From Vitrella brassicaformis CCMP3155 (Eukaryota; Protista; Chromerida), in the NCBI GenBank assembly GCA_001179505.1, contig CDMY01000436.1, positions 186,001 to 250,000 of the forward strand: 64,000 nt of DNA. Direction: 5' to 3'. This document shows, piece after piece, positions 4,195 to 11,200 of this stretch (within the stretch, counting starts at the first letter, position 1; every line of letters starts with the position of its first letter). The notes under the pieces were generated by a model. It was not told where the DNA came from. It saw only the letters and a list, made by a program, of their open reading frames with translations, and did no database searches. Made by a program: the position numbers and the translations under genes.

Positions 4195-5576
4195 ACATCA
4201 ATTGGTGGCTTCGATACGTGTGTACAGACGATCGCCAGTGAGTGAACGTTACTCAATCGTGCATCTGTACACAGCTGTACACGTTAGCACAGTGATCGAT
4301 CGATCTGCTCACAGAAGAAAAAAGCAAAGCAAAGCAACACGTCTCTCTCTCTGTCGAATCGCTCTCATTTGCCGTGTGTTCGGCGCTGATTGATTGATCC
4401 ATCGGCACGACTCACTCATCCATCGAGTGAGTGACTCATCGCCCACCCCACTGCCTGTGTCTCTGTGCGCCGGCTCACTCTCTGCCTCCGAGTGACTGTC
4501 ACCCACCCATCCGTCGGCCATCCATCCGTCGACGACGGCCAGCAAGTCGACGGCCAGCACCAAGAAAGCGGGACCCAAGCGACCTCGAACTGCCTGTATG
4601 TCACACTCACACACACCCATGACACAGACAGACAGACAGAGACAGAGAGAGACAGACAGGCAGCTGATGGAGAGAGGTCTGCCTCATGTGTGGTGTGTCT
4701 CGTGTGTGTGTGTGTGTGTGTGTCATTGCAGACTTGTACTTCTCGATGGAGCGCAGGCCAGAGGTCAAGGAGGAGAACCCGACCATGGCATTTGGAGAGA
4801 TTGCGAAGCTGTTGGGTGTGCAACAAATACCACATGCAACAAACACCAAAAACACCACACCCACGCCCCGTATGCGCCATGCATATGTGTGTGTATGTGC
4901 AGGTGCTGAGTGGAAGGAGATGTCGGACGAGGACAAGCAGCCGTACAAGGATCAGGTCACACACTCACACAGAGACGACATGACATCCATCCATCCATCC
5001 TCACTCTCCTCTGTCTCTCTGTCTCTCTGTCTGTCTGTGTGTGTCAGGCTGCTGAGGACAAGGAGCGCTACGAGCAGGAGAAGGCCGAGTGGGAGGAGCA
5101 GGAGGAGGAGCAAGACGACAACCAAGACGACAAGGCATGAGCCAAGGGCATGCACCACACACATGACCATCAACACGAGACGACAAGAGAGACACACCAA
5201 TGAACTGACCATCGCACAAACAGACAGACAGAGAAGGACAATCCATGCATGCCTCATATGCATCGCTCTGCCCGTCTGAGTGATCGAGTGGCTGCGTGTG
5301 AGTGACCCGAGTGCGGGCAAACGACTGCATGTGTGTGTCGGTGTGACGCGTGTGCGCATGAATCCATCCATGGTTGTGACCTGGCTTGCATTTCGTCCAA
5401 TGACATGGCCGTCAATTGACATCCACGCACCTGTCCGCACGCACTCAAGTTAAGGCCGACCACCGAACTCGAGATCTTAAAACAGCCGCACAGATGGACG
5501 GCTCATGCATGCAGTGCTATGCATGTGTGTCCGGGTGTGTGTGTCAGACACAGTGAGCATTGATATTGACATCCAT
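4195..5576 (+). repeat. Left arm of a long-range inverted duplication (HMGB locus with promoter, introns and 3' flank)
   Basis: Matches the reverse complement of ~60019-61480, from the catcaattgg...ggtggcttcgatacgtgtgtacagacgatcgccagt block to the ...attgacatccat block. Confidence 0.92.
4496..5140 (+). pseudogene. NHP6/HMGB-like single HMG-box copy lacking its start codon (probable pseudogene or N-truncated paralogue)
   Basis: Spliced frame ...STKKAGPKRPRTA|YLYFSMERRPEVKEENPTMAFGEIAKLLG|AEWKEMSDEDKQPYKDQ|AAEDKERYEQEKAEWEEQEEEQDDNQDDKA*. There is an in-frame TGA at 4493-4495 and no ATG before the box. The segment carrying the paralogue's ATG (MAKASSK...) is missing. Confidence 0.7.
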
Positions 5577-5709
5577 GGTGACGGTGTGAGAGGCCTTTCT
5601 GCGGCATGGAGAGCGAGAAATGGGACAGAGACACGACCTATCCAGCATGTGCCTCGACATACGAATGTCGAGGCTGCTGACTCTTGGTGAGCACATTGCA
5701 ATCAACGGG

Positions 5710-8144
5710 TCAAACAGCCTTCAACATTTTCGTATATATTTCCTGAGCCTGTCTGTCCTTCATCGCTTGATACGCCCATATTCCACCACTGAACCGTCAC
5801 TCACCCAGAGCACATTCAAGCGAGGAAACGATCAGATCAAACTCACATGCACGACGTGTCTCTCAAACAGCGAGTAAACAAACTACCTCCTCTCCGGCAA
5901 TCACTCACTCACAGGATGGCTGTCATGAAGTAGCCGATAAAGATGCAGGCAATGTAGATCTGCAGCAGACCGTACGCCAGCTCAAACCCGATCAAAAACC
6001 TTCAAGACACACAGGCCAGGCACACACAGAGACCAATGGATGCGTTGCATGAGAGATACAGCACAGCACACCATCTACAGTATCTATCTCTCTGTGTGGT
6101 CACTCCACTCACCCGAGCAGCGTGAGGTACATGGGCGCCAGAGTGGTGGCGAGGAGGACCTTGAGGATCTGGCTGAAGATGAACATCGACAGCGCCACAC
6201 GGGACGACTGGAAGGTGAAGCGGAAGAAGTAGATGAAGATCCACCGGTACGCCAGCGCCCAGTTGATGATGAACGAGGCGAACTTCTGGATGTCGTGGTT
6301 GGGGATCAGCGGGATGCCCCCGCCGCCCCCGCCACCTGCCATGGGGGAGATGGCGGGGAAGCGGCTGCCCTGGTGCTGCAGTGTCGTCAGCAGCTGCTCG
6401 GTGCGGGCCGCCGCACGCTCGATCAGGTCGCCCTGGTGGCCGTTGTCGCCGCTGCCGGAGCCGAACAAGACCTGCATCAACACAAGGGGACATGTGCACC
6501 CCACCCCGGAGGGTTGCTGTGCTGTGCGTGGTGTGTGTGATGTAATTCATTACACACTTGTGCGGCTGAGAGGGCCTGCACGGGATACTCCACGCCATCG
6601 ATGGAAACCGTCAGAGGGATGCTGCAAGGCAAGCACAACACGGCGATGGATGAGTACTTGCTGTACTGTATGCAGCTTAGCTTTTGAAGGAGTGCGGTGC
6701 AGTCCAATTGCTATCGTCTTACTTTCCGTTGAGGTAGTGTGCGTATCTCTTGGACAGGTTTCTGAGGGCGTCGGGGGCTGCCAGGGCCTCGCACGCAGCC
6801 GTCTGCTTCAGGTGGCACGTCAACTGCATGCCCTCACCGCCACCCTCAACATGGGGCCTGATCAGCAACAGATCAGCAGCCATGTCTTCGCTCTCTGTCT
6901 GTCTGTGTGTCAGTCATGCGATGCTCACTCGACTGTGTATTGTCCTGATTTGTCTGCAGTGAGCTTCCAGCCATGTGGGAAGTCAGGGTCAGTGCAGCCA
7001 GCTGGGCGACTGACGATCTGCAGACAGACAGGCACAGCGCACAGCCATGGATGAGCTCTTGCCTATGCCGTGACACGTTCCTGCCAGGCTCGCCTGTCTG
7101 ACTGACCTCGATCTTATCGGCAATGGCGAAAGCCGAGTGGAGACCCAAGGTCAGCTGAACACAACACGAGCATCAAACAAGCCATCACCCAGACATGAGA
7201 GATTGAAGAAGCGCGTTGGTCCATCCATCCGTGTGTGTTATGTCACCTGTTCTGTAAGTGCCGTGGCGTTGACGCATTTGGTGGTCAGGTTGGTGAGGCG
7301 GTCCTTCATCGATGACCACGGCAGGCCCGCACCACGCACCTTGTGGACCGACCAGCCACACACCACCACACCACACCCGATGCAATCAATCAATGGTACT
7401 GCTGGGTCGGATCCTGTGTGTGTGCGACTGAGTCGGTGACGTGACGTGACGCACCTCCAGGTTGAGTGTCTGCGGCTGCTGTGTGGCGGCCGTGTTGGTC
7501 GCGCTCACGCTGACCTTCAAACCGCCGCGGGTGTACAGACCAAATGTGTCACCGGTCACTGCACAACACAGACAGACCCATCCACTTCCAGTTCAGGGGA
7601 GCCGAGCCAGTCGTGCGCGACGCGATGGATGTACCTTCCATGCCTCCATCGTCGTTACCTTTGTTTCGCGTGGCTTCGACAATCCAGCCATTCGCCTCCC
7701 GAAACAGCTCACGAAAGACATTCTGACACAACACACACACACACATCCATCCATCCATCGTCCCGACATCTCTCTCATCCCCCGCCCACCTGTCGCTGAG
7801 GGTTGCGGCCACTTGCCACAATGCCGATCAGCTTCCTCGTCTCATGAGGCACAGACATACCACTGCCAACGCTAGAGCTGCTGCTGCTGATAGAAGGAGG
7901 AGGCGATGGGCTGCCGCCGCTCGAAGGCGAGTGCAGCAGCCGCGCCCCCCAGGAGCAGCCCACCGCCCTTGCAGCGTTCAGCGCATCCTGCGCGGGCAGC
8001 CGCCTCACCAGCACTGCCGACGGGTGCGACGATGCCGTGACACCGATCTGCCTGCACCAAGCAAACGAACACAAGAGCGTCAGATCTCGGTGTTTTGCAG
8101 ACTTGCACACTCAAGGTGTACCTCGCCAGCTGTCGTGGCAGCAT
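5710..8144 (-). CDS. Mitochondrion-targeted membrane protein with a degenerate HSP90/TRAP1-type N-terminal (GHKL) domain and C-terminal hydrophobic helices
   Basis: About 11 GT-AG exons splice in frame: MLPRQLAR|QIGVTASSHPSAVLVRRL...|NVFRELFREANGW...|...GGLKVSVSATN...QTLNLE|VRGAGLPWSSMKDRLTNLTTK...|LTLGLHSAFAIADKIE|IVSRPAG...GWKLTADKSGQYTVE|PHVEGGGEGMQLTCHLKQ...LRNLSKRYAHYLNG|...|hydrophobic exons...|GGIWAYQAMKDRQAQEIYTKMLKAV*. An alternative stop lies at 5909-5911 if the last intron is not used. Confidence 0.72.
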
Positions 8145-8291
8145 CTCTCCCTTCCTCCCTTTCGCTGATTAGCTCGCAGATCTGCGCAGCTGAGCTCGCA
8201 AGGGCCTCTCCGACAAGGCGCAGAAGAAGCGTTGAAGGGTGGGCTGAGCAGCACTGGCTCACGCCGCCGTGCAAATCGCAGCTGTTCCAGT

Positions 8292-11200
8292 ATGCTTATG
8301 GGCCCTGTGTCCGATGTGGCGGATGAAGTGAACTCGCACGGGCGGCGCGACGATTCCTTCTTCACCTGTTGTGACATTGTCAGCATGAGCAAGAGCATCA
8401 GCGGCGGCGCGGACCGCTACATGCCGATTTCCTCTAACATAGCCGAGGGAGAAAGCTTCACCGCCGCAGACGAGTGGCAGCATCCACGGACAGGTGAGCC
8501 AGGGAGCAAGGAAACCAAATGTTGACCTTGCGCATGAGAGGCATTGCTGGCTCTCGTGCGCATTGCAGGTGCGTCGGCTCATCGGCCCTCCCCTCACGGG
8601 GACGCGCTGCTCCCGATGAGCGGGACCATCGACGCTGAAGGCATCCACCTCACCCGCTCGGCGCACCAGTCGCCCTCCAACCGGCTCAACTTCATCTCCA
8701 TGCCCGTGCCCAACACGGCCCCGCCGTCCGCCCCATCGTCGATGAGGTGTCTGCCTTCCATCCGCAAGTGTCTGCCATCGGTGAGGAGACGACACCGCAA
8801 CCGCGAGCGGCTCTTCCAAAGGCAGCTCACCGACGGAGATGACGGCTTTCTCGGCGTGGAGGATGACAACGACGAGTACTGCATCAGCGAGGGAGGCGGC
8901 AGTGGCAGCCCCTATGCGCTGATGGATGCCGATGCGGATACGTCGCTGCCCGTGGGATTTCCGCCGAAGTCGCTGAGTGACAGCCCTTCCGGCGCCGAAG
9001 AGCACACGCCCACCGCACGCACCGCGGTGAAAAGGGCAGGCTGGTCGCGCGCGTGGAAGGACCGTCTGACCCTCTCGCGCAAGGCCAAAGGCACCGCCTC
9101 GACCACGGACCGGTCGCCGAAGCGCCACCCCCGCCACCTGCACCCTCCCCCATCGCCCCCAGCCGTCCCCTTCCCGCCCCCATCATCCACACACGAACAC
9201 GTCAACCAAGCTGCAGCAGCAGCAGCAAGCGGCATCTGCAACCACGCGGCTGACGACCAGGACGCCGCCAAGGGGGGCGGGAGTGGGGGCGCGAGCCCCA
9301 GCGACAAGAGGGCCGAGAACGACGATGCTGCCAAGAGGGGAGGGGGAGGGGGAGGCAAGAAAGACAGTGACCCCAACAACAATAGAGACAACGACCTCCC
9401 AGGTGGCGGCGGCGGTGGGCCGGAGGAGGGCGGCGAGGGTGGGGGAGGGGGAGGGGGTGACGACAACAACGGTGAGGAGGAGTCGTCCGCTTCGGAGGAT
9501 GACGAGTTTGTGGACTGTGAGGAGGAGGAGGATGAGAACGAGGAGGAGGATGACGACCCCGACCCCGACGTGCAGCAGGCCGCCTTCGGGGCCGCTCTGA
9601 ATGGCAAGGGCGCCGTGGATGGCGCCACGGGGGAGGATTGGCACGGCTACCTGCCGGCGCATCTGCGGGAGAGGGATCGCATCCCGAGGAGAAGGGCGCT
9701 GGCGGCACAGAAGGGCGAGTTCAAGCTGTCCCTTTGGAGCCTGCTCAAGGTAGGAAGCAGTGGGTCGTTGCAAGCTCACATACAGATGTACAGGCGATTG
9801 TTTGGTGTGTGGTGTGGTGTGTGCATCAGGACACTGTTGGCAAGGATTTGTCTCGCATTAGTATGCCCGTGACGCTCAACGAGCCGCTCAGCTTCCTGCA
9901 GGCACGCACCGCACAGAACATAACACAAATATATAAACGAAAACCACATACATCACAACAACACATCTGTCTGTCTCTGTCTGTCTGTCTCTGTCGTTGC
10001 CGTCAGCGTTTGGCCGAGGACGTGCAGTACCATTCCCTGCTGACGGCTGCGGCCAAGCAGACGTGCCCGCTGAAGCGGCTCGCACACGTGGCGGTGTTCG
10101 CATGCACCCCGTATGCCACGTCAGTCAAGCGTCTGCAGAAACCTTTCAACCCCATTCTAGGTCAATCAGTCACCCCCACCCCGCCAGCACACACACGGGC
10201 AAGGCAGGGAGTCTCCTATGTTATGTGTGTGGTGGTGTGTGTGGTGTGGTGTGGTGTGGTGTGCAGGTGAGACGTACGAGGTGAGCCATCTGGGGTACCG
10301 CATGATCGCAGAGCAGGTGTCGCACCACCCGCCCGTATCGGCCTACCACGTCATCGACGACAACCACAACTTCACTCTTTGGGGGTCATGCCACGGCAAA
10401 ATCAAATTCACCGGCACGACCGTCGAAGTCAAAGTCGCCGGTAAGCTTAGCTAGTGGGCAAGGGATGGATTCGACGAACGAACGAATGGATGGATGGATG
10501 GATGAGGACGTGTTTGTGTGTGTTTGTGTGTGTGTGTGTGTCAGGTTGGGTGCGTCTGCGGCTGCGGACGTGTGACGGTTGGGAGGAGTACGTCTGGGGG
10601 CGGCCCATCACTGTCGTGCACAACATCATCTTCGGTCGGTCGGCTGCTCTCCTCAAGAGAGGAATGCTCTCACTGCAGCACACATCATATCTATCTTATC
10701 TAGGCGTGTACCTACCGTGCGTGTGTCTGTCTTGTGTGTTGTGTTGTGTTGTGGTGCGTTGTGTTCGTTGTTTTGTCGCACTTAACTGCAGGTGGGCTGT
10801 GGATGGAGTGGGTTGGCATGGTGTCGGTGCGTAACTGCACGCGAAGACAGACCGCCATGCTCGAGTTCATGCGACGCACAGGCGGCATGTTCACCAAAGC
10901 ATCACCCCTACACCAACTGAGGTAACTAACGGTAGTTGACACCTACCTACTCACACACACCAATCACCCAACACACACTCTCTCTCTCGTGTGTCACGTC
11001 ACCCACCATCACAGAGGCGAGGTCCGCGACGAGACGGGCACCCCCCACTACGTGGTGGGCGGCTGCTGGAGCCAGCACATCTGGGTGCAGACCGTCAACG
11101 CGCGACAGCCGTCCTCGCCAGACAGCGGCGGGTCCAACCGCCCCTATGACGTCTCGTACGACCCCCCGACCACCGGCCTGCAGCGGCTGGACGGCGTCCA

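What the first reader, a model, noticed from the sequence alone, without database searches (positions are those of the whole stretch)
5710..8144. Putative HSP90-derived pseudo-ATPase anchored in the mitochondrial membrane
The spliced protein keeps the ordered landmarks of the HSP90/TRAP1 N-domain: VFRELFREA (vs IFLRELISNA), LKVSVS (vs LKIxI), TLNLEVRGAGLP (vs TLTIxDTGIGMT), QLTLGLHSAFAIADKIEIVSR (vs QFGVGFYSAFxVADKVxVxS), GWKLTADKSGQYTV (vs WES.xGGSFTV), GEGMQLTCHLK (vs GTKxILHLK) and LRNLSKRYAHYL (vs IKExVKKHSQFI). The Mg-binding Asn, the adenine-binding Asp of DxGxG and the G2-box glycines are substituted, so it should not bind or hydrolyse ATP. In place of the HSP90 middle and C domains it has three or four hydrophobic helices, and it starts with an Arg-rich, acid-free presequence. 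I know of no described protein with this architecture. It may be a repurposed chaperone fold acting as a scaffold or assembly factor in the divergent myzozoan mitochondrion.
Basis: partly seen in the sequence, partly recalled or inferred. Interest (0 to 1): 0.82.

Follow-up and report, generated by a model that had tools for sequence, protein, structure and literature searches.

The report
TRAP1-derived leader on ATP synthase subunit a
This gene encodes the proton-channel subunit (subunit a) of the alga's mitochondrial ATP synthase, and its long front part is a decayed partial copy of the mitochondrial HSP90 gene TRAP1, a visible trace of how this hard-to-move mitochondrial gene came to be nuclear.

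Summary
A spliced minus-strand gene encodes a protein whose N-half is a degenerate HSP90-type N-domain and whose C-end is hydrophobic. Spliced contigs from two studies carry ten GT-AG introns on one transcript.

The hydrophobic end (aa 356-442) matches subunit a of the solved Toxoplasma ATP synthase (6tmg_k: E 6.6e-10; 1e-17 with a family profile). The essential Arg (R385) and the channel Glu (E420) are invariant in four relatives. So this is the nuclear-encoded 'minimal' Fo subunit a described for myzozoans in 2021, not a new scaffold.

The N-half comes specifically from TRAP1:
- Best PDB hits are TRAP1 (E 5e-9), and TRAP1 is also the top fold match.
- All six introns in the 5' part of Vitrella's own TRAP1 gene recur here in the same order and phase, including the one splitting an Arg codon after a 7-8-codon first exon.
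- The ATP-binding motifs are destroyed, and the domain evolves far faster than H5-H6 (29% vs 74% identity).

It is most likely a long import leader captured from TRAP1. I found no paper describing that origin.

The parts
5685..8152 (-). Transcript as far as the spliced contigs reach (5'UTR at least to 8152, 3' end about 5685-5702)
   Evidence: X1 record 1 and X8 record 18
8122..8144 (-). Exon 1: start codon plus 7 codons. It ends AG|gtac in phase 2 and corresponds to exon 1 of TRAP1.
7790..8051 (-). Exon 2: Arg-rich presequence, Ser-rich strap and first helix of the TRAP1-like domain (E-T-R-K-L-I-G-I-V-A)
7659..7722 (-). Exon 3: 'RELFREA' helix. Catalytic Glu is kept (E100). The Mg-binding Asn is replaced by Glu104 (7698-7696).
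   Evidence: (record coordinates)
7455..7558 (-). Exon 4: first beta strands, ending T-L-N-L-E before the phase-0 intron shared with TRAP1
7247..7339 (-). Exon 5: degenerate DxGxG box (V-R-G-A-G; Asp replaced by Val152 at 7339-7337) and shortened ATP lid
7107..7154 (-). Exon 6: degenerate G2 box and the best-conserved HSP90 helix (H-S-A-F-A-I-A-D-K-I-E)
   Evidence: z 7.7 against TRAP1 exon 5
6929..7017 (-). Exon 7: beta strands, ending in the phase-2 intron shared with TRAP1
6723..6857 (-). Exon 8: 'CHLK' strand and last helix of the TRAP1-like domain, ending in the phase-2 intron shared with TRAP1
   Evidence: z 6.3 against TRAP1 exon 6
6558..6621 (-). Exon 9: end of the N-domain (I-P-L-T...). 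Homology to TRAP1 is no longer demonstrable here.
6113..6471 (-). Exon 10: low-confidence linker (aa 295-355), short helix, and helix H5 of subunit a with the essential Arg385 (6201-6199)
5909..5999 (-). Exon 11: helix H6 of subunit a with Glu420 (5983-5981), and stop codon TGA at 5911-5909
5685..5908 (-). 3'UTR.

Best explanation
The gene encodes the precursor of the mitochondrial ATP synthase Fo subunit a of Vitrella brassicaformis, in the 'minimal' myzozoan form that keeps only the c-ring-facing helices H5 and H6 (aa about 356-443).

As in the Toxoplasma enzyme, Arg385 on H5 would face the c-ring glutamate, and Glu420 on H6 would line the lumenal proton half-channel.

The roughly 290 residues in front are a partial DNA-level duplicate of the 5' half of the mitochondrial HSP90 gene TRAP1. 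This copy includes its first exon, presequence, N-terminal strap and N-domain, introns included. The H5-H6 remnant of the transferred mitochondrial atp6 gene was joined to it.

The copied domain can no longer bind ATP. It is drifting fast.

It most likely serves as a long N-terminal import leader. It would supply the matrix-targeting signal and a soluble, low-hydrophobicity passenger for the two very hydrophobic helices. It would probably be cut off before H5 once the protein is inserted.

Shown: the transcript, both homologies, the shared introns, the lost motifs and the rate difference. Inferred: targeting, cleavage and the carrier role.
For: Transcript:
- One spliced transcript, seen in contigs from two studies.
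- The product is identical to database protein P0001 from V. brassicaformis.

Subunit a identity:
- 6tmg_k 'subunit a' matches at E 6.6e-10 over aa 356-442, 2e-17 and 1e-17 with family profiles.
- R385 and E420 align with Toxoplasma R166 and E201 and are invariant in four relatives. Their roles are described in PMC7785744.
- The only canonical ATP-synt_A in the assembly lies in a plastid-type rps2-atpI-atpH-atpA cluster. No other mitochondrial candidate exists there.
- The locus is single-copy.

TRAP1 origin:
- PDB hits rank TRAP1 at 5e-9, then Grp94, HtpG and HSP90.
- A second species (L024, 342-aa ORF) hits subunit a, and otherwise only TRAP1 chains.
- Foldseek's top hit is the human TRAP1 N-domain, both with HtpG rows in the alignment (E 2.6e-13, TM 0.67 on target) and without them (E 4.2e-10).
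- All six introns of the first 286 codons of Vitrella's TRAP1 gene (contig C450) have counterparts here. They occur in the same order with phases 2,0,1,0,2,2. Four are at the same aligned residue and two are offset by 4 and 2 codons.
- Two of them (i2, i4) are absent from the other three HSP90 paralogues.

Leader reading:
- N-domain identity is 29% against 74% for H5-H6 (Vitrella vs P0002), and 28% against 64% in the Chromera pair.
- The Chromera N-part is no longer recognisable as HSP90.
- In Toxoplasma the N-part is unmodelled and predicted to be a cleaved targeting sequence.
Against: - No protein-level data exist for Vitrella. The mature N-terminus and the fate of the TRAP1-like domain are unknown.
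- The domain has been kept at about 200 residues, with its secondary-structure order intact, in at least two lineages. That argues for some constraint beyond a simple signal peptide.
- Both structure models are of low to moderate confidence (mean pLDDT 52.8 and 44.2), so an intact Bergerat fold is not shown.
- The runs holding the spliced contigs are only guessed to be RNA.
- The TRAP1 exon borders were inferred from homology and GT-AG, not from reads.
- Pfam finds neither ATP-synt_A nor HATPase_c in the protein.
Confidence: 0.75

Rival explanations
1. Same protein, but the TRAP1-derived domain is not removed. It stays attached to H5-H6 in the mature enzyme as a lineage-specific extra-membrane domain of the enlarged chromerid ATP synthase, with a structural role and no ATPase activity.
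For: - The domain keeps HSP90-core hydrophobic motifs and its secondary-structure order.
- It is retained in at least two lineages.
- Myzozoan ATP synthases are known to have recruited many compact accessory folds (PMC7785744).
Against: - It evolves 2-3 times faster than H5-H6 and is unrecognisable in Chromera velia.
- The Toxoplasma chain is only 224 aa. Its N-part is not seen in the map and is predicted to be cleaved.
- The linker at aa 295-355 is predicted disordered.
Confidence: 0.2
2. One reading: a membrane-anchored pseudo-chaperone that acts on its own as a scaffold or assembly factor and is not an ATP synthase subunit.
For: - The HSP90-type N-domain is real and catalytically dead.
- Pfam gives no family.
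Against: - The membrane part is specifically homologous to a structurally assigned subunit a, with the functional Arg and Glu invariant.
- The genome holds no other mitochondrial subunit a candidate.
Confidence: 0.03
3. Artefact: two neighbouring genes (a TRAP1 pseudogene fragment and a short subunit a gene) wrongly merged by assembly or annotation.
For: Exon 9 to exon 10 is the seam between the two homologies, and the linker has low complexity (a Gly run).
Against: - Single contigs from two independent studies span all exons in one open frame.
- The same two-part architecture occurs in intron-free transcript contigs of another species (L024) and in P0002 and Chromera.
Confidence: 0.02

Closest known systems
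Toxoplasma gondii ATP synthase subunit a (PDB 6TMG/6TMK chain k; Muhleip et al. 2021, PMC7785744)
   Same: - Nuclear-encoded.
- Only H5-H6 of the canonical six helices are kept.
- The essential Arg and the channel Glu are at aligned positions.
- A long non-hydrophobic N-terminal extension precedes H5.
   Different: - The Vitrella extension is about 355 aa against about 136 aa.
- The Vitrella extension is still recognisable as a TRAP1 N-domain with presequence. No such origin is described for the Toxoplasma protein, and its N-part did not align with the family's N-domain here.
TRAP1 / HSP75, the mitochondrial HSP90 (e.g. PDB 5F3K, 4IPE; Vitrella gene on contig C450)
   Same: - Presequence-type N-terminus, N-terminal strap motif (E-T-x-K-L-x-x-I-V) and N-domain helix/strand order.
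- Six shared intron positions and phases with the Vitrella TRAP1 gene.
   Different: - No middle or C-terminal domain.
- The Mg-binding Asn, the adenine-binding Asp, the lid segment and G2-box glycines are lost.
- It is fused to subunit a helices, so it is not a chaperone.
Nuclear atp6 of chlorophycean algae (Chlamydomonas, Polytomella), and presequences borrowed by transferred mitochondrial genes in plants
   Same: These points are from my own knowledge of the literature, not tested here:
- A transferred, very hydrophobic mitochondrial gene gains reduced hydrophobicity and an unusually long N-terminal leader.
- Plant rps10 and rps14 are textbook cases of leaders taken from resident mitochondrial protein genes.
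   Different: Here a whole folded domain of about 200 aa, with its introns, was captured, and four of the six helices were discarded.
ATPTG1-cytochrome c1 fusion gene of Toxoplasma and Plasmodium (PMC7785744; PMC13623125)
   Same: A myzozoan ATP synthase subunit is encoded on one gene with another mitochondrial protein and presumably separated by cleavage.
   Different: In that case both halves are functional proteins. Here the TRAP1 half is a catalytically dead, decaying copy.

Membership tests
ATP synthase Fo subunit a (ATP6), minimal myzozoan type | Significant sequence similarity to a subunit a assigned in a solved ATP synthase structure | tested here: met
   6tmg_k matches at E 6.6e-10, 2e-17 and 1e-17.
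ATP synthase Fo subunit a (ATP6), minimal myzozoan type | Essential arginine on H5 facing the c-ring | tested here: met
   R385 aligns with T. gondii R166 and is invariant in four relatives.
ATP synthase Fo subunit a (ATP6), minimal myzozoan type | Conserved glutamate on H6 lining the lumenal half-channel | tested here: met
   E420 aligns with T. gondii E201 and is invariant.
ATP synthase Fo subunit a (ATP6), minimal myzozoan type | Two long helices forming the H5-H6 hairpin at the C-terminus, with no H1-H4 | tested here: met
   The model has helices at 370-402 and 407-442 at pLDDT 55-72. There is no hydrophobic segment before aa 386.
ATP synthase Fo subunit a (ATP6), minimal myzozoan type | Physical presence in the mitochondrial F1Fo complex next to the c-ring | not testable with these tools
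   This needs a complexome profile or cryo-EM of Vitrella mitochondria.
Canonical ATP-synt_A (Pfam PF00119, six-helix fold) | Match to the Pfam model, with H1-H4 present | tested here: not met
   No Pfam hit, even at E up to 10. The only PF00119 match in the genome is the plastid-type atpI.
HSP90 family / TRAP1 (GHKL ATPase chaperone) | N-domain homologous in sequence to HSP90 N-domains | tested here: met
   TRAP1 at E 4.9e-9, Grp94 at 8e-6, HtpG at 2e-3. Shared introns with Vitrella TRAP1.
HSP90 family / TRAP1 (GHKL ATPase chaperone) | Bergerat ATP-binding fold | tested here: inconclusive
   All top Foldseek hits are HSP90-family N-domains. However, the models have mean pLDDT 52.8 and 44.2, and Foldseek also scores sequence.
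HSP90 family / TRAP1 (GHKL ATPase chaperone) | Nucleotide-binding motifs: Mg-binding Asn, Asp of DxGxG, ATP lid, G2-box glycines | tested here: not met
   Asn is replaced by Glu104 and Asp by Val152. The lid is 12 columns shorter. The G2 box has Glu and Thr in place of two Gly.
HSP90 family / TRAP1 (GHKL ATPase chaperone) | Middle domain with catalytic Arg, and C-terminal dimerisation domain (PF00183) | tested here: not met
   No PF00183 hit in P0001. Sequence after aa 294 is a linker plus subunit a. The genome's PF00183 matches lie at four other loci.

The most novel reading that the evidence does not exclude
The TRAP1-derived domain is not just a fossil but a working part. One option is an intramolecular, ATP-independent carrier or holdase that keeps H5-H6 import-competent and hands them to the inner-membrane insertion machinery. 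The other is a retained matrix-side domain of the chromerid ATP synthase. In either case the capture of a chaperone domain would be what allowed atp6 to leave the mitochondrial genome in the myzozoan ancestor, and the apicomplexan 'targeting sequence' would be its shrunken remnant.
Probability: 0.25. Interest if true: 0.75.

Novelty: new variant of a known kind. Interest (0 to 1): 0.6.

Why it matters
atp6 is one of the mitochondrial genes that almost never moves to the nucleus, because its product is so hydrophobic. Myzozoans (apicomplexans, chromerids and relatives) are a rare exception, and so far the route has been described only as 'truncation plus reduced hydrophobicity'.

This locus preserves the route itself. 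The two indispensable helices sit behind the promoter-proximal exons, presequence and soluble N-domain of a duplicated TRAP1 gene, with the TRAP1 introns still in place.

This has three consequences:
- It gives a datable, testable mechanism for the transfer.
- It suggests that the long 'targeting sequence' of the Toxoplasma and Plasmodium subunit a may be a worn-down TRAP1 copy.
- It offers a natural design (a soluble carrier domain plus only H5-H6) relevant to attempts at nuclear (allotopic) expression of ATP6.

It also assigns a function to a database protein that its sources (NCBI, UniRef) list as unnamed or uncharacterised.

Tried and rejected
- Exon-by-exon Pfam, PDB search of exon 8 alone and the protein atlas with exon 10 gave nothing. 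The exons are too short.
The full protein became available by reference only when the representative search with exon 10 returned P0001, which is identical to the model.
- Pfam on the full proteins P0001-P0003 gave no family.
- Word-index searches found only P0002 and two bacterial HtpG, and with P0003's C-terminal part the Chromera orthologue P0006. No apicomplexan, perkinsid or dinoflagellate sequences could be retrieved by reference. Whether their N-extensions also derive from TRAP1 could therefore not be tested.
- The Chromera-clade N-parts, profiled against HtpG, gave only a 16-column match at the homologous helix (probability 2.8%). Chromera against Vitrella N-domains by BLASTP was not significant.
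- Exon 9 against TRAP1 exon 7 was not significant. Exons 3 and 5 against TRAP1 were individually not significant.
- The own-genome search found no paralogue of this gene.
- Six literature searches, together with reading four of the papers, found no paper linking the subunit a N-extension to HSP90 or TRAP1. The library does not cover all journals.
- Complex prediction was not used. No binding claim rests on it.
Full report
**Gene model and expression**

On the minus strand between 8144 and 5909 I found eleven exons with GT-AG borders and consistent phases.

Laying public contigs on window:5300-8400 showed two spliced records, X1 record 1 (1546 nt) and X8 record 18 (1497 nt), from different studies. 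They carry all ten introns:
- Nine appear as explicit joints with CT..AC ends on the plus strand.
- The 7722/7790 joint is implied by the record coordinates.

A DNA run (X3) covers the locus unspliced. The HSP90-like exons and the hydrophobic exons are therefore on one transcript.

Both spliced records are continuous from 5997 down to about 5700. The short donor of exon 3 (7659) is used, not the in-phase alternative 24 nt downstream.

The run type is only guessed to be RNA. However, the genome holds a single copy of the locus, so the intron-less form is best read as mRNA.

**How the full protein was handled**

Exon-level Pfam, PDB and atlas searches were blank.

A search of the 1.84-billion-protein representative library with exon 10 returned three proteins. 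The best, P0001, has 443 aa and is residue-for-residue the model ending at 5909. Its sources call it an unnamed or uncharacterised protein of Vitrella brassicaformis CCMP3155. The assembly size of 72.7 Mb in 1064 contigs fits that organism from my own knowledge. All later work used P0001 by reference.

**What the protein is**

phmmer of P0001 against all PDB chains gave two separate, non-overlapping homologies.

The first covers aa 356-442, which match chain k ('subunit a') of the Toxoplasma gondii ATP synthase structures 6TMG/6TMJ/6TMK/6TML at E 6.6e-10. This rises to 2e-17 and 1e-17 with three- and four-sequence family profiles.

Muhleip et al. 2021 (PMC7785744) report the following for that chain:
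- It is a nuclear-encoded, minimal subunit a that retains only the horizontal helices H5 and H6.
- Arg166 pairs with the c-ring glutamate.
- Glu201 lies on the lumenal proton path.

In the alignment these residues are R385 and E420 of P0001. Both are invariant in Vitrella, P0002, the L024 protein and Chromera velia P0006. The structure model puts two long helices at 370-402 and 407-442.

The only canonical ATP-synt_A match in the whole assembly lies in an intron-free, 43-46% GC cluster of rps2, atpI, atpH, a TPR gene and atpA. That is plastid DNA. This gene is therefore the only candidate for the mitochondrial subunit a in the assembly.

**The N-half is TRAP1-derived**

The second homology covers aa 57-271, which match the human TRAP1 N-domain at E 4.9e-9 and zebrafish TRAP1 at 2e-8. 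Grp94 follows at 8e-6, HtpG at 2e-3 and cytosolic HSP90 at 0.01-0.15.

Only the TRAP1 alignment extends into the N-terminal strap, with the TRAP1-type motif E-T-x-K-L-x-x-I-V-A.

An independent relative points the same way. The 342-aa ORF of metatranscriptome-like contig L024 has an annotated start at an internal Met. It hits subunit a at 8.8e-11, and its only other PDB hits at E up to 10 are sixteen TRAP1 chains.

Foldseek gives the human TRAP1 N-domain as top hit in two settings:
- With an AlphaFold model whose alignment contained two HtpG N-domains: E 2.6e-13, TM 0.67 on the target.
- With a model built from family members only: E 4.2e-10.

Both models are of low to moderate confidence, so I treat the fold as supported, not proven.

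**Intron test**

Vitrella has four HSP90 loci. The one on contig C450 (L022) is the TRAP1 orthologue. Its exon 5 hits TRAP1 chains best, at 3e-21, and it carries the TRAP1 strap motif.

Reading its exons from the sequence gives introns after nt 20, 300, 376, 456, 731 and 860 of the CDS, with phases 2,0,1,0,2,2. The gene studied here has introns after nt 23, 285, 349, 453, 683 and 818 with the same phases, plus two extra ones.

| Intron | Position in both genes | Match |
|---|---|---|
| 1 | Splits an Arg codon as AG\|G after a 6-7-codon first exon; nearly the same donor (gtacgcc vs gtacacc) | same site |
| 2 | Three residues before the R-E-L motif | same site |
| 3 | In a variable loop | offset by 4 codons |
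| 4 | Between ...T-I-E\|D-S-G-V-G-M (TRAP1) and ...N-L-E\|V-R-G-A-G-L (this gene) | same site |
| 7 | Splits the codon after G-S-F-N-I / G-Q-Y-T-V | same site |
| 8 | Splits the codon directly before (F/I)-P-L, with a 2-codon indel upstream | effectively same site |

The other three HSP90 paralogues are uninterrupted across the positions of introns 2 and 4.

Exon-wise local alignments to TRAP1 are colinear. Several are individually significant against shuffles:
- exon 6: z 7.7
- exon 8: z 6.3
- exon 4: z 4.1

The N-half is therefore a DNA-level partial duplicate of TRAP1 that includes its first exon and presequence. Homology is no longer demonstrable in exon 9. Exon 10 begins the linker and subunit a.

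**State of the copied domain**

Alignments with TRAP1 and HtpG show the following:
- The catalytic Glu is kept (E100).
- The Mg-binding Asn is Glu104.
- The adenine-binding Asp is Val152.
- The lid is 12 columns shorter.
- Two G2-box glycines are Glu and Thr.
- There is no middle domain to supply the catalytic Arg.

ATP binding and hydrolysis are therefore very unlikely.

The domain also evolves much faster than the channel helices. Identity is 29% against 74% between Vitrella and P0002, and 28% against 64% between the L024 protein and Chromera.

Its recognisability fades along a series:
- Vitrella hits TRAP1 directly.
- The L024 protein hits TRAP1 weakly and the Vitrella domain at E 3e-5.
- Chromera velia is recognisable only through L024.
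- The 224-aa Toxoplasma chain aligns only from residue 89 onwards.

**Most likely mechanism**

The protein is the subunit a precursor.

Shown: transcript, subunit a homology with functional residues, TRAP1 origin with shared introns, dead ATP site, fast drift.

Inferred:
- The TRAP1 presequence (5 basic and 1 acidic residue in the first 40) targets the precursor to the matrix.
- The soluble TRAP1-like domain and linker act as a long leader that lowers overall hydrophobicity.
- The leader is removed before H5.

The third point follows what Muhleip et al. propose for Toxoplasma, where the N-part is unmodelled and has a predicted cleavage site. The same lineage also encodes ATPTG1 on one gene with cytochrome c1. 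That is a precedent for ATP synthase subunits riding on other mitochondrial proteins.

The main rival is that the domain stays on the mature subunit as an accessory domain. I give that about 0.2.

**Novelty**

The minimal nuclear subunit a of myzozoans is known. Vitrella and Chromera homologues were used in Fig. 4a of PMC7785744, although no accession could be found in the held text.

That paper does not contain the word HSP90. No paper found in six library searches connects the N-extension with HSP90 or TRAP1 (papers read). The scan's own notes hold nothing on it.

The gene is thus a known kind. The new part is the TRAP1 origin of its leader, documented by shared introns. I rate it a new variant of a known kind and of solid interest to people working on mitochondrial gene transfer and apicomplexan bioenergetics.

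Noticed in passing
L022 (G000:C450:5000-14000), minus strand 6689-5129: Vitrella's own TRAP1 gene. Its first seven exons were read from the sequence. The genome has four HSP90-family loci in all (C270, C185, C396, C450).
   Followed up: partly
L023 (G000:C467:11000-20999): Intron-free, 43-46% GC cluster of rps2, atpI, atpH, a TPR protein and atpA. This is plastid-type DNA sitting in a 71-kb contig of the assembly.
   Followed up: partly
L024:67-1092:+: The database protein P0003 (277 aa) starts at an internal Met. The contig's open frame begins 65 codons upstream, with an Arg-rich presequence and the TRAP1-type strap motif. Twelve JGI contigs carry it; the four read are 1.3-1.7 kb and intron-free. 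The source organism is unknown, and Chromera is the closest relative (58% in the C-terminal part).
   Followed up: partly
window 7634-7658: A second GT donor 24 nt downstream of the exon 3 donor, in the same phase, would add 8 residues. It is not used in the two spliced contigs.
   Followed up: yes
window 5365-5375, 7205-7235, 7735-7765; L022 about 5500-5515: Short CCATCCATCC / GGATGGATGG and (GT)n runs recur in non-coding stretches of this locus (introns and downstream flank) and in an intron of TRAP1. Read laying skipped 7721-7764 as a repeat.
   Followed up: no
window 4686-5140 (+): Exon fragments of an HMG-box protein lie downstream of the gene on the other strand (PF00505, E 1.5e-4, below Pfam's cut-off for a 55-aa piece).
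   Followed up: partly
window 8544-9869 (+): A 442-codon open frame runs head-to-head with the gene. It is rich in Gly, Asp and Glu runs and has no Pfam family. It was not examined further.
   Followed up: partly
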